Shown here piece after piece: positions 54,404 to 62,647 of a stretch of DNA of 64,000 bases. This DNA comes from Hyaloraphidium curvatum SAG 235-1. Its lineage: Eukaryota > Fungi > Monoblepharomycota. The stretch is taken from contig JAIVFI010000024.1 of assembly GCA_025558095.1 (NCBI GenBank), positions 62,001 through 126,000 of the forward strand, given 5' to 3'. The notes under the pieces were generated by a model. The model was not told the origin of the DNA. It did no database searches and was given only the letters and a program-made list of their open reading frames with translations. Made by a program: the position numbers and the translations under genes. Numbering within the stretch: position 1 is the stretch's first letter; every line of letters begins with the position of its first letter.

Positions 54404-54754
54404 ATGGGAGGCGTTGCAGGATGCAGCCGCGTCGGTGCATCGTGCGATCGGACCGCCGTCCGAAGCTCGCATCAGCTGTTCCATTTACAGCTCTAGGCGA
54501 AGCATCGAGCGATGAGTCCAGTCCTCGTATCCTTGTGTTCGGCGGGAAAACGGGGTGGGGGCGGGGTGGGAGGACGTGACCGGTGCCCGGTCACCTTCGC
54601 CACTTCGGCGCCTGAACAAGGCACGCCGGCACCGCGCCCCGCGACCGGCCGGCCGGTGCCAGCGGCGATGTCTTTTCGCCGGCCCCCACACCGGCGGCCG
54701 AGCTAGGCGGGAGAGCGCGAGCGCCACCGGGCAAAGTCCGCACGGGCAGCCGCG

Positions 54755-57700
54755 ATGCTCCAGACAATCAGCGCCCGCGTCAAGCGCGCCCGGTCGGCGA
54801 CGGCAAAGTCCGCCGCGACCGCCGTTTCCTCGGTGGACGAGCCGCCGGGCGCGACGCCGGACGCGAACGGGCAGGCCGCGCCCGCCCCCGATGGCGCGCC
54901 CGATTTAAGGCTCCGCACCGACTCGCAGTTCGCCGGCAAGGCCGCCGTGTCGGACGGCCTGCCGGTGCTGCCCGCCGCCGCAGACGACGGCTACATCGGC
55001 GCGCGCAAGGGCAGCTTCGCCAACGGCAACCCAAAGGTCGTGGCGTCCTTCTACAACACCATGGCCGTGCCGCCGTCGGCGAGGGTGCCGACGCGGGGCA
55101 GCATCTCGGACGACGCCGTCGGGGCGGGTTCCCCGCCGGGGATGGCCAGGGGCGCGTCGTGGGTGCAGGCGGCGGCCACGGAGAAGCTCAAGGACGCGCC
55201 GTCGGGACGCGACAGGGTGAAATTCCCGGACTACCCGGGCTACCGGATAACAAAGAAGCTGGACGAGACGCCGAATTGCAGCGTGTACCGCGCCGTGCGC
55301 TACGGGGACGGGAGCAACCGGCCGGTCATCCTGAAGGTGGGTTGCTAACTTGAAATGGACCCCTGCAAGATCTGACCGCATTGCACCTCATGATCTGCTA
55401 CCGCTTGATCTGTCCATTGCACTTTTGGTACCCGTCATTCGCACACCCGCCCATTGGCAGGCTTTGGACAAACCGTACCCCGCGGTCGAGGACGTGCAGC
55501 GCTACCGCAACGAGTTCGAGCTCCTCACCAAGGCGGCCCACATCCCCGGCGTCGTGCACGGCGTGGCGCTCGAGCGCTTCGCCAACGACGTCATGGTCAT
55601 GGTCCTCGAGGACATCGGCGGCCAGTCGATCTGGCAGTACCTGCTGCAGCACGCCTCGGAGCAGCACCCCGCCGGCATCGGCCTCATCACCGAGGACGAC
55701 GAGCTCGACTCGGACCTCGGCGCGGCGCCCATCTCGGGCGTCCCCGCGCTCGGCCGCATCGCGCCCGAGACCGTGCTCCGCATCGCCCTGGACGTCGCCC
55801 GCACCCTCGCCGCACTGCACGACATCCCCATCGTGCACAAGGACGTCACGCCGCAGAACATGATCTGGAACCAGGCCACGGGCGAGGTCCGCCTGATCGA
55901 TTTTGCCGCCTCGTTCGCGGGCCAGTTCGAGCGCCCTTTCGAGCTGCAGGGCACGCTGGCCTGGATCCCGCCCGAGCAGACCGCGCGGATCAACCGCAAC
56001 ATCGACTCGCGCTCGGACCTGTACGGCCTCGGCGCGAGCATGTACACCATGCTCACTGGGCGCACGCCCTTCCGCACCTCGGACCCGCTCGAGCTGCTGC
56101 ACTGCACCCTGGCCGTGGAGCCGCCGGCCATCGTGGACGACAAGATCCCCGAGATGGTGGTCAAGATCATCGCCAAGCTGGTGAAAAAGTCGCCCGAGGA
56201 CCGGTACCAGTCCGCCGAGGGGCTCATCGCGGACCTCGAGACCTGCCTGGACTACCTCGTCAACCGCGGGGCCGGCGGCCGCGGCTCCGTCGGCGGCGGC
56301 CTCGCGGCGGGAAGCCGCCAGCTGCGCCGGATGACCTCGGCCAACAGCGAGCACAGCGGCGGCCCGCTGAGCCCCACGGCGCCGGGCGAGATACCCCTGT
56401 TCGAGCTGGGCGAGTACGACACGCGGCGGCTCGAAATCCCGGCTAAGCTGTACGGCCGCGAGCGCGAGATCTCCGAGATCCACCGCGCCTTCGAGTTCGT
56501 CGCGTCGGAGCACCAGCCCGAGGTGGTGCTCATCGGCGGGTACTCGGGCATCGGCAAGACGAGCATGGTCTGGGAGGCCGTGGCCACGGGCATTCTGCAG
56601 CGCAAGGGCAACTTCCTCAAGGGGAAATTCGACCAGATGCGGAGCCAGCCGTACCACGCCATCCTCCGCGCGTTCGGCGAGTTCCTGCGGGGCATCCTGA
56701 AGGAGGAGGCCGTGGTGATGGAGGGGTGGAAGGCGAGGTTCGAAAAGGTCAACTCGCGGCTGTCCACCATCATGGTGGACCTGATCCCGGAGCTGTCCTA
56801 TTTTCTGGACGAGAAGAAGCTCGTCGCGCTGCCGCGGAACCAGGCCTTCGAGCGCTTCAACATGGCCTTTTTCGAGTTCATCTCGGTCTTCCTGGATGAG
56901 TCGGCGCCGCTGGTCATGTTCCTGGACGACATGCAGTGGGCCGACCTGGCGTCGCTCAAGCTGGTGGAGAACATCCTCGACAACATCACCTCGAACCACG
57001 TGCTCTACAACAACTCCTCCTACCCCTTCCTCTTCATCGGCTCGTACCGCTCCAACGAGGTGACCCAGGGCCACCACCTCATGTCCTTCTTCAAGCGCCT
57101 GCAGGACGAGGGCATCACCGTCAACGACATTGTCCTGCAGCCGCTCAACGTGGACGACGTCATCAACCTCCTCGCCGACACGGTGGCCAAGCCAAAGACC
57201 AACCGCGGCGTGCAGGAGCTCGCCAAGGTGGTATTCGAAAAGGCCGGCGGCAACCCGTTCTACATCAAGCAGCTGCTCATGAAGATGTACGACGAGAAGA
57301 TGTTCTCGCAGGTGTGCGACCGCGTCACGCGCAAGTTCGCGTGGTCGTGGAACATGCCCCGCATACGGACGCTGGCCATCATGGACAACGTGGCCGACAT
57401 TTTGGTGGCCACCATGGCACAGCTGCCCACCGACAGCCGCACGGCGATCAAGACCGCCGCGTGCTTCGGGAGCATCTTCACGCTCGAGGACCTGTCGGAG
57501 GTGCTGGTGCGGTCGCCGCGGGACGTGGGCGTGGACCTCCACGAGCCCATCGACAAGGGGCTGGTGGCGGGGCGGACCTTCTTCTCGGGGCGCATCAGCA
57601 GGGAGATGGACGACCAGACCATCGCACGGCTGATACAGAGCGACAAGCCGTCCTACGTCTTCCTGCACGACCGCATCATGCAGGCCGCGTACGAGCTCAA

Positions 57701-60700
57701 CTCGCCCGAGGATCTGCAGGCCACGCACCTGGCCATCGGGCGGTGCCTGGCGCTCAAGCTGCAGAAGCGCGGGGACTCGGACCAGAAGCTCATCTTCGGC
57801 ATCCTGGAGCACTACCACAAGGGCCTGGTGGACGACCTGCTCAAGGGGACGAGTCCGGAGCTGCACGCCGAGCTGCGCAACCTGGTCGCGCTCAACGCGC
57901 AGGCGGGGAAGCTGGCCGTAGCTGCCGGCGCGTACAACGCGGGTTACAAGTACTACATAAAGGGCCTCGAGTTCCAGGACCGGCTGCGCGGCGGGCTGCC
58001 CATCAAGGGCAGCGGGGACCCGGACTACCGCCTCATGTTCAACATGCACTACTGCGCGGCCGAGGCGGCGTACCTGTCGATCCTGTACGACGAGACCAAC
58101 CGCCTGGTGGAGCTCATGGACGCCTACGTGGTGGACCCCGTCGACAAGGCGCAAGTGCAGACGCTGCAGATCAGGGTGTCGATGGCACGGGACCGGCCGC
58201 AGGAGACGATCCTGCGGAGCCTGCTGGTGCTCGACAACCTGGGCGTCAACATCCCCCGCAACCCCAACCGGCTGCAGCTGCGCTCGTTGTTCAGCGAGGT
58301 CCGCAGTTTCCTCCGCGGCAGGACGGACGACATGCTGGTCAACCTTAAGGTGGGTCTGCTTAGCCTTTGCTCCTTGCGTTCCTCTTATTCGTCGCCTCCA
58401 GGATACCTCCAACCAGCAGGATCGCTTCGTCGTCCGCATTCTCAACGACCTCATCCTCTACACCCTCCACTTCGAGCCGCGGCTCTACACCGCCGTCGCC
58501 CTCAATTATGCCCTGCGCACCTTCCGCACGGGCCACCTCGCGTACGGCTTCGTCGTCTACGCCACCCTGCTGGCGGGCCAGAACAGGGATTTCGACGGTG
58601 CGTCTCATGCCGGCCGACTCGCTTGATGGCTTGATCCGAACGGCTTTGGCTCCACAGAGGCGTACCGTTTCTGCAAGATCGCTCTGCGGCGATCCGAATT
58701 CCTTACTGATCAGACAACAAAGGCCCGGACCATCGTTGGCGCGCTGATGTTTGGCATCGACTACAAGGAGAGCCAGCGGGAGGAGGTGCCGCTGATTCTC
58801 AACGCTCTGGGTGGGTGCCTCGCTGCCCTTTCCATCGACAGGCACTAATCCGAGCACCCTTCCAAGACATGGCATGGGAGACTGGTGACTCGGAGGACAT
58901 GGCGCTGTGCGCGGTCAAGTTGGGGGTGACGGGCTTTTGGTCGGGGTGTCCGCTGCGCAGCCTGAGGGAGGAGTTTGCGCCCCGGATCGTGCAGACGATG
59001 CGGGCCATCCAGCGGCCCATGCAACAGCGATGGGTGGCGCCGTACTTGCAGGCGATCGACTGCCTTTCCGGCGCCGTCGACGACCCAGGGAAGCTCGTTG
59101 GGGAGTGGATTGACCTCGAGGAGGAGCTGCAGGAGCCGGTGAAGAACCGGTTCCAGGGCGATGCCAACGCCGCGATCATCGCTTCCGCCATGGACATGCT
59201 GCTGGCTTACATGTGGAAGGACTATCGGCGCGCTATGCGGGATCTGGCCCTGCTCAAGGCGGCGCAGGGCAAGGCCAAGGCTTACCGGTCTTCGGAGGAG
59301 GTCCCCTTCACTTGGCTCGAGATCCTGGTGCGGATCAAGAACCTGTGGTTTGCGCGCGAGGAGAAGCGGGCGCGGGGCAAGGAGGCCGCGCCGGTCGCGG
59401 AGGGCCTGGAGGCGGTCGGCCCCGCGCTCGCGATCCCGGAGGACGAGGAAGAGCTGGACATGGTGGAGACAGAGCCTTTCCGCTTCACCATCTTTTCCGA
59501 ACTGGCAGAGCTGCGGCGGATAAAGGGCCTCTTGAAGACTTTGGAGGAGTTTGCAACCATGGCACCCATGAACCAGCGGCACCGGTTCCTCATCGCGTCG
59601 GCCGAGCTCGCTGCCTACAAGGGCGATATCCGCGCCTTGGAATTCTACGAGGCGGCGGCGACCGAAGCAAAGAACCGGTCTTTCCAGTGGGAGTACGGCT
59701 TGATTCGCGAACTGCATGTCGAGTTCCTCCTGTCCCTCAAGAACGTCACCAGCGCAAAGCAGGTCATGCGGGAGGCGCTCCATTACTACGCCAAAGATGG
59801 AGCAGTGGCCAAGGCGAAACATCTTGAGTTCCTGTATCCCCAGCTCATCAGCACCAAGACGGACTTCGCGGCGCGGACGCTCATGATTGGTTCCGACTCG
59901 AAGGATGGCGCGATGGCGATCACCAACTCTGTCATGGGCGAGTCGGTGGACGTTCTGACGCTCTTTAAAACGACGCAGGCAATCTCGAGGCAGCTGTCGA
60001 TAGAAAAGCTGCTCGAGACGCTGGCTGGGATCGTGCTGGAGAGTTCGGGAGCGCAAAAGGTGTCGTTTGTCGTGCTTCGCAGAAACGCGCCGAGGATCAT
60101 CGGAGAGGGTTGGATCGAGCAGGCTTCTGCCGATGAGAAGGGTCGCGGCACTCGCCAGTCTTACAGTGGTTCGGAAGGTGGAGGCCCCCGCAGTAAGCGG
60201 AGGAGCGGACAACGGCTTTCATCGACGGCCACTATTGGGACCGGAATCGCAAACGCCGAGCGGACATCGCGTGCCCAATCTCAGCCGGATCTGCGGCTCA
60301 ACGTGGGCACTTCTGTTCCGGACCGCCGCCCTTCGGCCTTTTCGGAACCTGGCCTCTCGCCTATACTGGCGACGGACAACGTGATGGACGGTCCGAGCGA
60401 CCCGCTTGATGTCGTGCGATCGGGCTCGTTTGGCAGGGCCGACGTCGTGGAGGAGATTCCGCTGCAGATGTTCCCGCCTATGGACAAGCAAGCCGCGGCC
60501 CGCAGGGCATCGGCAAAGTCGGCGGACTACATCGCCAGCGCTATCGCGGCGGCCAACGGACTCCTGATGACAGCGGCCAACGGCGCTCCGGGCAGTCCGG
60601 CAACGCCGGCCAGCTCCGCCATGAAGCCCAGCAGTCGTCGGGGCTCCATTGTCGAGTTCGCCAACGCCGTGGCTCATCCTGCGTCGATCTTGGACAAACG

Positions 60701-62297
60701 CAAGTCCGTTGACAAGGGGTTCAACGCCAATGCCTCGCGACGCGCCTCGGTCACGATCGTCAAGCCGGAGGAAGCTGCGGCTCGCAAGCAGTCGTATCAG
60801 GGAAACTCGACGGAGCGGAGCAATTCTTTTTCGGGCGTCTCTGGTGGTGCCTCCAACCCCGTCAATGGCAGCGATGAGGACAATCGGCGACCATCCGACT
60901 CGTCGGTGGCGGCTCAGACGAACCCGAACATGCGCTTCCTCACGACCGACAAGCCGGTGGACTACGACACGTTGCCCTTGACCATCGTCAACTACGTGAT
61001 TCGGACGAAGGAGAGCGTTGTGCTTGACAACGCGATTGCGGACCCGCGCTTCATGCACGACAACTACATCGTCAAGTACAAGCCGCTCTCGATCCTCGCC
61101 TTCCCCATCGGTCTGCAGAAGAACAACATGCTCGGGATCGCGTACCTCGAGTCCCGCGCCCTCACGGGCGTCTTCACTGCCGACAGGCTCTACGTGCTCA
61201 ACATCGTCTTTGGGCAGGCCGGCATCTCGCTCGAGAACGCGCGGCTCTACTCGGCCATCAACAAGTTCGTGCCCAACGACATGATCTCGCAGTTGTCACA
61301 CGAGAGCGTGGTCAACGTTCAGCTGGGTGACTGTATCGACACCGAGATGAGCGTGATGTTTACAGAGTGAGTTCGGTGGCGAGTTTCCTGTTCGACGCTC
61401 GCTCACCTTTCCCTGTTCAGTGTCCGCGACTTCACCTCCATGTCGGAATCCATGACGGCACGCAAGACCCTCAACTTCCTCAACGCTTATCTGGGTCGCA
61501 TGCAGCCCGTAATCGAGCAGAACCGCGGCATCATCGACAAGTACTTTGGCGACGGCATCCTCGCCCTCTGGCCGACGGACCCGGACCATGCGGTCGAGGC
61601 CGCCATGGCGATGCAGCGCGAGCTGGCGCAGTTCAACCAGAAGATCGCGCAGGACAACACCTGGCTCGGCCGCGAGATCCGGATCGGCGTCGGGGTGCAC
61701 ACGGGCAGGCTGATGTTGGGGGCTATCGGGTCCAAGAACCGTATCGACATGTCGGTCATTGGCGACACCGTCAATTTGGGTGAGTTGTTTGGCTGTGGCG
61801 AGCGTTGTCGCAGGACTGATTCTCTGCTTGCAGCTTCGCGCCTCGAGGGCCTGACCAAGTACTACAAGGCGGACGTCATCGTCTCGGAAGGGACGCATCA
61901 CAGGTTGAAGCGCCCGCAGAACTTCAATTTCCGCCTGTTGGACCTGGTGCGCCCCAAGGGCAAGGCCGAGGCCATCCGGATCTACGAGCTCATCGATGCC
62001 GAGTACGACGAGGGCCTGCGCGCGCGAAAGATCGCCACCAAGGACCGCTTCAACGACGGTGTGATGCTGTATCAGAAGAAGCAGTTCGCACCCGCGCTGG
62101 AGCGCTTCGAGGCGACGCTCGCCGGTGCGGCCGACGACTCGGTGGCACGCATGTACAGGGACCGGTGCCGCAAGATGCTGGAGAAGATTGCGGGGGGATT
62201 CAGGGTCGATAACTGGGACGCCGTTGAGGTGTGTTGTTCGCTTCGGTCGCTCCGAACAGGCACTAACGCTCCGGTGCAGGTCATGTACGACAAGTGA
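54755..62297 (+). CDS. Multidomain Ser/Thr kinase - AAA (STAND) ATPase - TPR-like - GAF - class III adenylyl/guanylyl cyclase (about 7 introns)
   Basis: Kinase motifs VILK, HKDVTPQN, DFA, GTLAWIPPE and SDLYGLG. ATPase motifs LYGRERE, GYSGIGKT, FLDDMQWAD, GGNPFY and FLHDRIMQAAY. GAF motifs IVNYVIRTKESVVL and FTADRL...QAGISLENARLY. Cyclase motifs MFT-D-VRDFT (spliced), DKYFGDG and IGDTVNL|ASRLEG. Confidence 0.93.
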
Positions 62298-62647
62298 CCT
62301 CCTGCTCGCGCGAAGGACCGCGCTCAAGATACCCCGGCACGCTTTTGAACATAGCCATTTTGATCATCCCGAGCTGTTGCCTTCTTTACTATGTCTGATA
62401 TGTAATGTCGGCTTGAACATCAGCTGAATTTTTGCTTCAATCGCCCTTTCACGCAATCGACCTGGGCCGAGTGCTTTGCCAGAGACGCTCGGGCCCGCCC
62501 GAACTCCGCGGTGCAATTCCGCCAATCTGGGCAGCGATCCGCCGCCTAGATCCACGCAGCTCTCTTTGCGGGCTATTTTCAGCCTCTTTCCGCACCATCG
62601 TGCCCTCCCGAGGCCTGGCGTAGCGCCCCCCGAGCGCGGAGCCAACA

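What the first reader, a model, noticed from the sequence alone, without database searches (positions are those of the whole stretch)
54755..62297. Kinase-STAND ATPase-TPR-GAF-adenylyl cyclase: a non-canonical cAMP signalling hub in a fungus
Seen: one spliced gene of roughly 2,300 codons encodes all five modules. The cyclase keeps both metal Asp residues (FT-D-VR, formed across an intron; FGDG), the purine-specifying Lys (DKY), a Ser at the second specificity site (DMSVIG) and the N..SR transition-state pair. It ends in a helical tail like that of bacterial cyclases. Known: the kinase-AAA-GAF scaffold occurs in bacteria, notably cyanobacteria, and in fungal Chk1/Mak2-3-type hybrid histidine kinases, where the output is HisKA-REC. 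The canonical fungal cyclase Cyr1 is LRR-PP2C-AC, and Lys plus Thr/Ser marks class IIIb, often bicarbonate-responsive, adenylyl cyclases. Inference: a G-protein-independent, NLR-like switch coupling a ligand or stress signal to cAMP, gained by HGT or by swapping the output domain.
Basis: partly seen in the sequence, partly recalled or inferred. Interest (0 to 1): 0.82.

Follow-up and report, generated by a model that had tools for sequence, protein, structure and literature searches.

The report
Bacterial-type kinase-STAND-GAF adenylyl cyclase in chytrid
This is a real, spliced and expressed 2,363-codon gene of the early-diverging fungus Hyaloraphidium curvatum whose five-module design is copied end to end from a family common in filamentous cyanobacteria, so it is most likely an old bacterial gene transfer and not a new fungal invention.

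Summary
One + strand gene of 8 exons (54755-62297, 2,363 codons) encodes a kinase-like domain, an AAA_16 STAND ATPase, a TPR-like solenoid, a GAF and a class III cyclase with a helical tail. Spliced contigs of a public run confirm introns 2-7. They also join the kinase/ATPase exon to the cyclase exons.

All canonical cyclase residues are present: both metal Asp, Lys plus Ser (class IIIb, ATP type) and the Asn/Arg pair.

The gene is already public as an unnamed "hypothetical protein" of Hyaloraphidium curvatum. Orthologues exist in two Gonapodya species. Four intron positions are shared, so the gene is old within Monoblepharidomycetes.

The architecture is not new. The same domain order, collinear to the last residue, is common in filamentous cyanobacteria and a few other bacteria. 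The genome has no second copy of the scaffold. Its cyclase groups with the bacterial kinase-STAND cyclases, not with the fungus's other cyclases.

Whole-gene transfer from bacteria is therefore the best reading, but the donor is unresolved. An output-domain swap inside fungi is unlikely.

The fungal copies add a roughly 280-residue disordered insert in the GAF, about ten-fold enriched in RRxS sites.

Enzyme activity and the switch mechanism are inferred, not shown. Interest is moderate.

The parts
54755..62297 (+). Whole gene: 8 exons, 2,363 codons. Identical to public protein P0171 (Hyaloraphidium curvatum DFJ74DRAFT_679984) except for 15 residues.
54755..55246 (+). N-terminal low-complexity region of about 160 residues, with no family match.
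   Evidence: no Pfam match in E1. Not aligned to bacterial homologues.
55247..56258 (+). Ser/Thr-kinase-like domain, interrupted by intron 1 (55337-55460). Motifs: VILK Lys 55325-55336, HKDVTPQN 55833-55859, DFA 55896-55913, PPE 55962-55979. There is no Gly-rich loop. A fungal-only acidic insert is present.
   Evidence: Pfam Pkinase. Alignment with fungal and bacterial homologues. Motif coordinates.
56445..57005 (+). AAA_16 STAND-type P-loop NTPase. Walker A GYSGIGKTS at 56538-56564. Walker B VMFLDD at 56913-56945.
   Evidence: Pfam AAA_16 104.9 bits..
57381..60086 (+). Winged-helix element plus a long TPR-like alpha-solenoid (sensor arm). It spans introns 2-4.
   Evidence: AlphaFold2 model of P0171:820-1665, pLDDT 90.1, pTM 0.82. 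Foldseek matches are all TPR superhelices, including STAND-TPR protein 6mfv. No sequence match in PDB.
59991..61259 (+). GAF domain split by an insert. N-part about 59991-60122, C-part 60972-61259.
   Evidence: Pfam GAF 26.6 bits on the C-half. Homology to bacterial GAFs.
60123..60971 (+). Fungal-only disordered insert of 282-283 residues inside the GAF. It carries six R[RK]x[ST] sites, against 0.63 expected from its composition.
   Evidence: The insert is absent from bacterial homologues (coordinates).
61302..61985 (+). Class III (IIIb-type) cyclase catalytic domain across introns 5 (61367-61420) and 6 (61780-61833). Metal Asp codon 61365-61366 + 61421. Lys 61539-61541. Metal Asp 61551-61553. 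Ser 61752-61754. Asn 61773-61775. Arg 61839-61841.
   Evidence: Pfam. PDB alignments to Cya2 and CyaC. Family alignment. Splicing confirmed.
61986..62297 (+). C-terminal helical tail shared with bacterial homologues, ending W-D-x-V-x-V-x-x-D-K. It includes intron 7 (62229-62279).
   Evidence: alignment. Weak TPR_9/RNPP_C hits. Intron confirmed.

Best explanation
This is an expressed nuclear gene of the fungus Hyaloraphidium curvatum (class Monoblepharidomycetes).

What it encodes. A 2,363-residue soluble protein with this module order: low-complexity N-terminus, Ser/Thr-kinase-like domain, AAA_16 STAND NTPase, winged helix plus TPR-like solenoid, GAF, class IIIb nucleotidyl cyclase, short helical tail.

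Origin. The whole architecture belongs to a bacterial family that is especially common in filamentous cyanobacteria. It most likely entered the ancestor of Hyaloraphidium and Gonapodya as one ready-made gene by horizontal transfer. Afterwards it gained spliceosomal introns, an acidic insert in the kinase-like domain, and a disordered insert of about 280 residues in the GAF that is rich in RRxS sites.

How it works (inferred).
- The cyclase makes cAMP, judged from its Lys/Ser specificity pair and its complete catalytic set.
- Class III cyclases act only as dimers.
- A signal read by the TPR-like arm or the GAF would let the STAND ATPase exchange nucleotide and oligomerise.
- That would bring two cyclase domains together and switch synthesis on.
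- The RRxS insert would let a basophilic kinase such as PKA feed back on the enzyme.

Shown: the gene, its splicing, the single transcript, the domains, the residues, the orthologues and the bacterial relatives. Inferred: transfer direction, enzyme activity, the switch and the feedback.
For: Gene and transcript. The model is consistent. Spliced contigs confirm introns 2-7 and join exon 2 to the cyclase exons. The exon translations are exact substrings of public protein P0171.

Resident in fungi.
- The window carries spliceosomal introns.
- The Gonapodya prolifera orthologue sits on a 758-kb scaffold between Arf, KIN17 and thiamine-synthesis genes.
- Four intron positions are shared, including the one inside the first metal-Asp codon.

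Bacterial relatives.
- Of the 150 best matches to exon 2, only two are close (86% and 63% identity). Both fall in the fungal clade; one is from Gonapodya and the other is unnamed. The remaining 148 share 33-39% identity, and every one I looked up that carries a name is bacterial, mostly cyanobacterial.
- Fifteen of those 150 end in the same cyclase.
- Searching the GAF-cyclase-tail region gave 804 long proteins. Ranks 1-4 are the query itself, two further Monoblepharidomycete proteins and an unnamed relative. After them, nearly all of the best 120 carry Pkinase + AAA_16 + GAF + Guanylate_cyc, and the named ones are Microcoleus, Oscillatoria, Trichormus, Planktothrix, Lyngbya and others.
- The alignment is collinear to the last residue.

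Against in-fungus assembly. The genome has no scaffold paralogue. The cyclase groups with bacterial kinase-STAND cyclases and apart from the genome's hemerythrin-type cyclases, with SH-aLRT support of 100.

Catalytic residues. They are conserved in the four fungal sequences aligned (P0172 reads through an intron at the first metal-Asp codon) and align with CyaC and Cya2.

STAND and TPR. AAA_16 with Walker A and B. A confident solenoid model matches TPR proteins and a STAND-TPR structure.

RRxS enrichment. Six to eight sites in the three named fungal proteins (three in the unnamed relative P0172), against 0.2-0.8 expected; none of 500 shuffles reached the observed count in any of them.
Against: - Both scaffold trees put the fungal clade on a long stem (1.07-1.35 changes per site) at an unresolved base of the bacterial sample. 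Neither a donor nor nesting inside the cyclase-type bacteria is shown.
- Fungal group X histidine kinases could not be fetched, so they were not in the trees.
- Only the best 120-150 hits of very large result lists were seen, so more distant eukaryotic copies cannot be excluded.
- No member of this family, bacterial or fungal, has a measured activity that I could find.
- The kinase-like domain lacks a Gly-rich loop and has HKD-x-T and DFA, so it may not phosphorylate anything.
- The GAF scores weakly (26.6 bits) and is interrupted, and its ligand is unknown.
- Run X1 is only guessed to be RNA, although its contigs lack the introns.
Confidence: 0.7

Rival explanations
1. Output-domain swap inside fungi. 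A fungal group X hybrid histidine kinase (kinase-like, AAA, GAF, HisKA, REC) lost its histidine-kinase output and acquired a cyclase domain already present in the fungal genome.
For: Group X kinases share the N-terminal kinase-like and GAF modules and are widespread in fungi (PMC6324907, read). The genome holds about nine other cyclase loci that could serve as donors. Among bacteria, the output has switched between histidine kinase and cyclase many times on the scaffold tree (at least 6-13 changes forced).
Against: No second AAA_16 scaffold exists in this genome. The GAF C-half, the cyclase and the tail match bacterial cyclase-type proteins best and are collinear to the last residue. The cyclase separates from the genome's own hemerythrin-type cyclases with support of 100. 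No fungal histidine kinase appears among the named proteins in the 150 best matches to exon 2.
Confidence: 0.07
2. Ancient vertical inheritance. The gene was present in an early fungal or eukaryotic ancestor and survived only in Monoblepharidomycetes.
For: The fungal clade sits on a long branch outside the sampled bacteria rather than nested in them. Shared introns show that the gene is old in this class.
Against: This would need losses in every other eukaryotic lineage represented in the databases searched. The only eukaryotic hits seen are the Hyaloraphidium and Gonapodya proteins, plus two unnamed close relatives. Bacterial relatives number in the hundreds, across several phyla.
Confidence: 0.1
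3. The cyclase domain does not make cAMP. It could be a guanylyl or pyrimidine cyclase, or a catalytically silent dimerisation module.
For: The best solved match, 2w01, is Synechocystis Cya2; that Cya2 is a guanylyl cyclase is my own knowledge, not a tool result. PADLOC Pycsar cyclase models score up to 63.9 bits on exon 6. No activity has been measured for any family member.
Against: Lys sits where Cya2 has Glu (IDKY against IDEF in the alignment). Ser aligns with the Thr of the adenylyl cyclase CyaC. All six catalytic positions are kept across the fungal orthologues, which argues for an active enzyme. The Pycsar hits are generic class III similarity, and no effector gene lies next to this one.
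Confidence: 0.12
4. Bacterial contamination or a chimeric assembly or annotation that joins separate genes.
For: The closest relatives outside the class are bacterial, at 33-45% identity.
Against: There are seven GT..AG introns, six of them confirmed by spliced contigs, and one contig joins the modules. GC content matches the flanks. Orthologues lie in fungal chromosomal context with shared introns.
Confidence: 0.01

Closest known systems
Bacterial Pkinase-AAA_16-GAF-class III cyclase proteins, about 1,750-1,830 residues. Examples: Oscillatoria nigro-viridis PCC 7112 'adenylate/guanylate cyclase' (P0273), Trichormus variabilis (P0244), and many Microcoleus proteins named 'AAA family ATPase'.
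   Same: The domain order is identical from the kinase-like domain to the helical tail and is collinear to the last residue. Identity is 33-39% over exon 2 and 40-45% over GAF-cyclase-tail. The kinase motifs are equally non-canonical (no Gly-rich loop, HKD). The cyclase has the same Lys plus hydroxyl-residue pair.
   Different: The fungal proteins have introns, an N-terminal extension of about 160 residues, an acidic insert in the kinase-like domain and an RRxS-rich insert of about 280 residues in the GAF. They also have Ser instead of Thr at the second specificity site and DFA instead of DFG. Some bacterial members add PAS or globin domains. I found no characterised member.
Cyanobacterial 'trifunctional serine/threonine-protein kinase/ATP-binding protein/sensor histidine kinase' (e.g. 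Nostoc P0003), and fungal group X hybrid histidine kinases (Chk1, Mak2/3).
   Same: The kinase-like, AAA_16, solenoid and GAF scaffold is the same. The group X description comes from PMC6324907.
   Different: The output is HisKA-HATPase_c (with REC in hybrids), not a cyclase. No such domains occur in any exon here. Group X sequences were not compared directly.
Class IIIb adenylyl cyclases with solved structures: Spirulina CyaC (1wc0) and P. aeruginosa CyaB (3r5g). Also Synechocystis Cya2 (2w01).
   Same: The catalytic fold and residues are shared. Best PDB hits have E-values of 3e-17 to 5e-11. Lys and Ser align with the Lys and Thr of CyaC.
   Different: Those enzymes have other N-terminal sensors and no kinase-like or STAND modules. 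Cya2 has Glu at the Lys position.
Mycobacterium tuberculosis Rv0386/Rv1358/Rv2488c-type cyclases (cyclase, NB-ARC-like ATPase, TPR, LuxR HTH). Recalled from my own knowledge, not tested here.
   Same: A class III cyclase is fused to a STAND-type ATPase and a helical repeat sensor.
   Different: In those proteins the cyclase is N-terminal, there is no kinase-like or GAF module, and there is a DNA-binding output.
TIGR03903, TOMM system kinase/cyclase fusion protein.
   Same: It also combines a kinase, a cyclase homology domain and an ATPase/helical region. Exon 2 matches its profile positions 481-876.
   Different: The score is 70.6 bits against a cut-off of 705.75. By my recollection of the TIGR03903 description (not tested here), the domain order differs there (kinase, then cyclase, then the rest). 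This gene is not a member.
Canonical fungal adenylyl cyclase Cyr1 (LRR, PP2C, cyclase).
   Same: It is a class III cyclase in a large multidomain fungal protein.
   Different: No exon here has LRR or PP2C. In this genome none of 27 PP2C matches lies beside any of the 12 cyclase matches.

Membership tests
Class III nucleotidyl cyclase (Pfam PF00211) | Profile match above the curated cut-off. | tested here: met
   41.4 bits on exon 6, against a cut-off of 21.9. The orthologue P0002 scores 58.7 bits over profile positions 8-179.
Class III nucleotidyl cyclase (Pfam PF00211) | Two metal-binding Asp and the transition-state Asn and Arg. | tested here: met
   FTD, GDG and NLASR are present and conserved in the fungal and bacterial homologues. 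They align with Cya2 and CyaC.
Class IIIb (adenylyl, Lys plus Thr/Ser) | A substrate-specifying Lys, and Thr or Ser in place of the class IIIa Asp. | tested here: met
   The Lys in IDKY aligns with the CyaC Lys. The Ser in DMSVIG aligns with the Thr in CyaC DFTAIG. The bacterial homologues have Thr there.
Class IIIb (adenylyl, Lys plus Thr/Ser) | cAMP synthesis, dimer formation and bicarbonate response. | not testable with these tools
   This needs an enzyme assay.
Bacterial Pkinase-AAA_16-GAF-cyclase family | The same domain order along the full length. | tested here: met
   Pfam on P0002 and P0057. Precomputed Pfam for nearly all of the best 120 hits. Alignments.
Bacterial Pkinase-AAA_16-GAF-cyclase family | Phylogenetic placement inside the bacterial cyclase-type proteins. 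| tested here: inconclusive
   The fungal clade is monophyletic (support 100), but it attaches at an unresolved base. The bacterial cyclase-type proteins are scattered among the kinase-type ones.
STAND NTPases | A P-loop NTPase of the AAA_16 type with Walker A and Walker B. | tested here: met
   AAA_16 at 104.9 bits. GYSGIGKTS and VMFLDD.
STAND NTPases | A winged helix followed by a repeat sensor arm. | tested here: met
   The model has pLDDT 90.1. Foldseek hits are TPR superhelices and the STAND-TPR protein 6mfv, although TM-scores are low, at 0.13-0.32.
STAND NTPases | Nucleotide-dependent oligomerisation. | not testable with these tools
   This needs biochemistry.
Active eukaryotic-like Ser/Thr protein kinase | Gly-rich loop, VAIK Lys, HRD-x-K-x-x-N, DFG and APE. 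| tested here: inconclusive
   Lys (VILK), the catalytic Asp and Asn, and the Asp of DFA are present. The Gly-rich loop is absent, the loop Lys is replaced by Thr, DFG reads DFA and APE reads PPE. The bacterial relatives share most of these deviations.
Fungal group X hybrid histidine kinase | HisKA, HATPase_c and REC output. | tested here: not met
   No such Pfam match in any exon.
Cyr1-type fungal adenylyl cyclase | LRR and PP2C domains before the cyclase. | tested here: not met
   No LRR or PP2C match in any exon.
TIGR03903 TOMM kinase/cyclase fusion | A score above the curated cut-off. | tested here: not met
   70.6 bits against 705.75.
Pycsar defence cyclase (PycC) | Pyrimidine specificity and an adjacent effector gene. 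| tested here: inconclusive
   Generic PycC profile hits of up to 63.9 bits. The Lys/Ser pair is of purine type. The flanking open frames differ in kind: per an untested first-reader note, the downstream one is a chitinase. I did not scan the neighbours.

The most novel reading that the evidence does not exclude
Monoblepharidomycete fungi took a ready-made bacterial STAND-cyclase sensor and wired it into eukaryotic cAMP-PKA signalling. They did so by inserting a disordered, RRxS-dense loop into its GAF domain. This would create an NLR-like, G-protein-independent cAMP source under direct PKA feedback, a regulatory layout not described for any fungal cyclase.
Probability: 0.25. Interest if true: 0.65.

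Novelty: new variant of a known kind. Interest (0 to 1): 0.45.

Why it matters
Fungal cAMP signalling is usually described around a single Cyr1-type cyclase controlled by Ras and G proteins. This gene shows that one early-diverging fungal class has long kept a giant bacterial-type sensor cyclase. It sits beside about nine other cyclase loci, so cAMP input in zoosporic fungi is much more varied than in the model species.

It is also a clear case of a five-module, roughly 1,800-residue bacterial signalling protein moving into a eukaryote whole, surviving, gaining introns and acquiring eukaryote-style phosphorylation sites.

I found no characterised member of the family in either domain. One enzyme and oligomerisation study would therefore inform hundreds of cyanobacterial proteins as well.

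The design itself is not new, and gene transfer into chytrids is already well documented. That limits the surprise.

Tried and rejected
- Joined protein model. Exons were searched by reference. For full-length comparisons I used public protein P0171, which a search returned and which equals this gene.
- Unspliced cyclase frame. The PDB search used the frame 61422-62228, which reads through the in-frame intron 6. Only the exon 6 part aligned.
- ESM Atlas look-ups. They gave only generic bacterial GAF and kinase-AAA clusters.
- PDB sequence searches of the ATPase and solenoid regions found nothing.
- First clustering of C-termini by BLAST did not separate output types. I replaced it with phmmer using the cyclase exons.
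- The mixture-model tree on 51 x 1,364 columns did not finish in two runs. LG+G4 was used instead, and that model is more prone to long-branch artefacts.
- Donor lineage. It could not be resolved in any tree.
- Search for a Cyr1-type gene. No PP2C hit is adjacent to a cyclase hit. A 1,558-residue frame with a weak PP2C match on contig C14 has no LRR or cyclase match. This was not pursued further.
- Literature searches for this architecture in fungi or cyanobacteria found no description. One query was rejected for syntax, and one Pfam call was rejected for stop codons.
- Defence reading. PADLOC hits are generic kinase and cyclase similarity.

Full report
**Observation**

The region 54755-62297 holds one + strand gene. 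I read the splice sites from the sequence and checked phases by script. The exons are:
- E1 54755-55336
- E2 55461-58349
- E3 58402-58597
- E4 58658-58810
- E5 58867-61366
- E6 61421-61779
- E7 61834-62228
- E8 62280-62297

This gives 7,092 nt, or 2,363 codons plus the stop. There are seven GT..AG introns of 51-124 nt.

One public run holds the stretch (X1). Its contigs, laid on 57000-62400, skip introns 2-7 at exactly these borders. A 6,695-nt contig runs from exon 2 through exons 3-5 into exon 6 (to 61650). A 656-nt contig covers 61621-62381. So the kinase/ATPase exon and the first half of the cyclase lie on one spliced molecule. The run is only guessed to be RNA, but DNA would keep the introns.

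**Method note**

Exons were searched separately by reference. For full-length work I used a public protein that a search returned.

**Domains**

- Pfam finds Pkinase (69.8 bits) and AAA_16 (104.9 bits) in E2, GAF (26.6 bits, C-half only) at the end of E5, and Guanylate_cyc (41.4 bits, cut-off 21.9) in E6.
- Pfam finds no TPR. The region between the ATPase and the GAF also has no sequence match in the PDB.
- An AlphaFold2 model of that region, built on a 110-sequence alignment, is confident (pLDDT 90.1, pTM 0.82). It shows a winged-helix element followed by a long array of paired helices.
- Its Foldseek matches are all TPR superhelices (TTC7B, IFT-A subunits, Ctr9, Ski3, LGN). They include 6mfv, a STAND protein with a TPR sensor. 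TM-scores are low, as expected for flexible solenoids.
- So 'TPR' holds at the level of fold.

**Cyclase residues**

- The first metal Asp codon is split by intron 5 (GA|T).
- Lys lies in IDKY and the second metal Asp in FGDG.
- Ser lies in DMSVIG.
- Asn and Arg lie in NL|ASR, on either side of intron 6.

The best solved relatives are Synechocystis Cya2, Spirulina CyaC and P. aeruginosa CyaB. In those alignments the Lys pairs with the CyaC Lys and the Ser with the CyaC Thr. Cya2 has Glu at the Lys position. This is the class IIIb, ATP-type signature. Linking that signature to bicarbonate response rests on published work on class IIIb enzymes and was not tested here.

**Identity of the gene and organism**

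A search with the Gonapodya orthologue returned P0171, 'hypothetical protein DFJ74DRAFT_679984 [Hyaloraphidium curvatum]', 2,348 residues. All my exon translations are exact substrings of it. The one difference is that the public model omits 15 residues (VNRGAGGRGSVGGGL, about 56262-56306) inside E2. I see no GT..AG pair there. That spot was outside the reads I laid.

So the window comes from Hyaloraphidium curvatum, a Monoblepharidomycete. The gene is already public but unnamed.

**Relatives in fungi**

Full-length orthologues with the same Pfam content occur in:
- Gonapodya prolifera JEL478 (P0170, 2,287 residues)
- Gonapodya sp. JEL0774 (P0002, 2,250 residues)

There is also an unnamed 2,071-residue call (P0172) and an 86%-identical fragment (P0001).

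The G. prolifera gene lies on a 758-kb scaffold between Arf, KIN17, methyltransferase and thiamine-synthesis genes. It has about 18 introns. Four of them sit at the same alignment positions as Hyaloraphidium introns 2, 3, 4 and 5. The unnamed call reads straight through an intron at the FT|D site.

The gene was therefore in place, and already carried introns, before these genera split. It is not contamination.

**Relatives in bacteria**

- Exon 2 scored against 1.84 billion representatives. It gave two close matches (86% and 63% identity), which both fall in the fungal clade; one is from Gonapodya. The other 148 of the best 150 have 33-39% identity and lengths of mostly 1,750-2,400 residues.
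- Every one I looked up that carries a name is bacterial. Most are cyanobacterial 'trifunctional Ser/Thr kinase/ATP-binding protein/sensor histidine kinase' or 'AAA family ATPase'.
- Fifteen of the 150 end in a cyclase that matches exons 6 and 7.
- Searching the GAF-cyclase-tail region of the orthologue found 804 long proteins. After the four top-ranked fungal-type proteins, nearly all of the best 120 carry Pkinase, AAA_16, GAF and Guanylate_cyc.
- The named ones come from Microcoleus, Oscillatoria nigro-viridis PCC 7112, Trichormus variabilis, Planktothrix, Allocoleopsis, Tychonema and Lyngbya. add Okeania, an Anaerolineae genome and a second deltaproteobacterial genome. Identity is 40-45%.
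- The alignment runs without a break to the final residues: fungal DNWDAVEVMYDK against bacterial DGWDGVEVLDHK.

The architecture is thus a standard bacterial one and not a fungal novelty.

**Origin**

- The Hyaloraphidium genome has no second copy of the AAA_16 scaffold. Only generic kinase domains match.
- It does have about nine other cyclase loci.
- Three of these share the same kind of helical tail. Two of them also carry a hemerythrin domain.
- In a cyclase tree, the gene's cyclase groups with the bacterial kinase-STAND cyclases. It separates from those three paralogues with support of 100.
- Together with the end-to-end collinearity, this favours transfer of a complete gene over assembly inside the fungus.

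Limits on this conclusion:
- In both scaffold trees the fungal clade is monophyletic (support 100). However, it hangs on a long stem at an unresolved base of the bacterial sample.
- Bacterial cyclase-type proteins are scattered among the kinase-type ones.
- So no donor can be named.
- Fungal group X kinases, described in PMC6324907, could not be fetched for a direct test.
- I saw only the top of very long hit lists.

**Lineage-specific features**

- The kinase-like domain lacks a Gly-rich loop and has HKD-V-T-P-Q-N, DFA and PPE. The bacterial relatives also lack the loop and have HKD-I-N. Most of the 'non-canonical' look is therefore a family trait.
- The fungal proteins add an acidic insert in that domain.
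- They also add an insert in the GAF of 269-282 residues in the three named proteins (193 in the unnamed relative P0172). The insert is absent from bacteria.
- That insert holds six to eight R[RK]x[ST] sites in the three named proteins, and three in P0172. One or two occur in the remaining roughly 2,000 residues, and 0.2-0.8 are expected from composition. None of 500 shuffles reached the observed count.

**Mechanism (inferred)**

- Class III cyclases form their active sites across a dimer.
- STAND ATPases oligomerise on nucleotide exchange after their sensor arm binds a signal.
- The simplest reading is that the solenoid or the GAF senses a ligand, the ATPase oligomerises, and the cyclase domains pair and make cAMP.
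- The RRxS loop offers feedback by PKA or a similar kinase.
- None of this has been measured for any member of the family that I could find.
- NCBIfam and PADLOC give only generic or sub-threshold matches.

**Verdict**

The architecture is not new, because it is common in cyanobacteria and conserved in one fungal class. What is new is modest: a eukaryotic, intron-bearing branch of an uncharacterised bacterial sensor-cyclase family, with a phosphosite-rich insert.

Noticed in passing
window 56262-56306: The public gene model (P0171) omits 15 residues (VNRGAGGRGSVGGGL) in a Gly-rich linker between the kinase-like domain and the ATPase. There is no GT..AG pair at the borders, so this looks like an annotation artefact or an allelic in-frame deletion.
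   Followed up: partly
window 54668-54706: A short upstream open frame (ATG plus 11 codons, then TAG) lies about 50-90 nt before the start codon. Judging from the length of the 6,695-nt contig, it would be inside the 5' leader.
   Followed up: no
G000:C29:571239-571766 (L024), G000:C23:644744-645268 (L026), G000:C36:474678-475208 (L025): Three paralogous bacterial-type class III cyclases have the same kind of helical tail. Two of them are followed by a hemerythrin HHE domain in the same open frame. Earlier notes of the scan flag the same fusions.
   Followed up: partly
G000, whole genome: There are twelve Guanylate_cyc matches at about nine loci, including two tandem domains on C13 and three pieces on C27. 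None of 27 PP2C matches lies beside any of them, so no Cyr1-type LRR-PP2C-cyclase gene was evident.
   Followed up: partly
L032 4270-8943 (-), G000:C14: A 1,558-residue open frame has only a weak PP2C match near its C-terminus and no LRR or cyclase match.
   Followed up: partly
P0172 (assembly GCA_041447055.1, 7.5-kb contig): An unnamed 2,071-residue gene call, 58-62% identical to this gene, reads through an intron at the FT|D site and breaks off in the tail. It is probably a third Monoblepharidomycete lineage called with a prokaryotic gene finder.
   Followed up: partly
Bacterial homologues P0176, P0180, P0183, P0189 and others: Some cyanobacterial members of the family carry a globin (PF00042) or PAS domain between the GAF and the cyclase. 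This hints at gas or redox sensing in part of the family.
   Followed up: no
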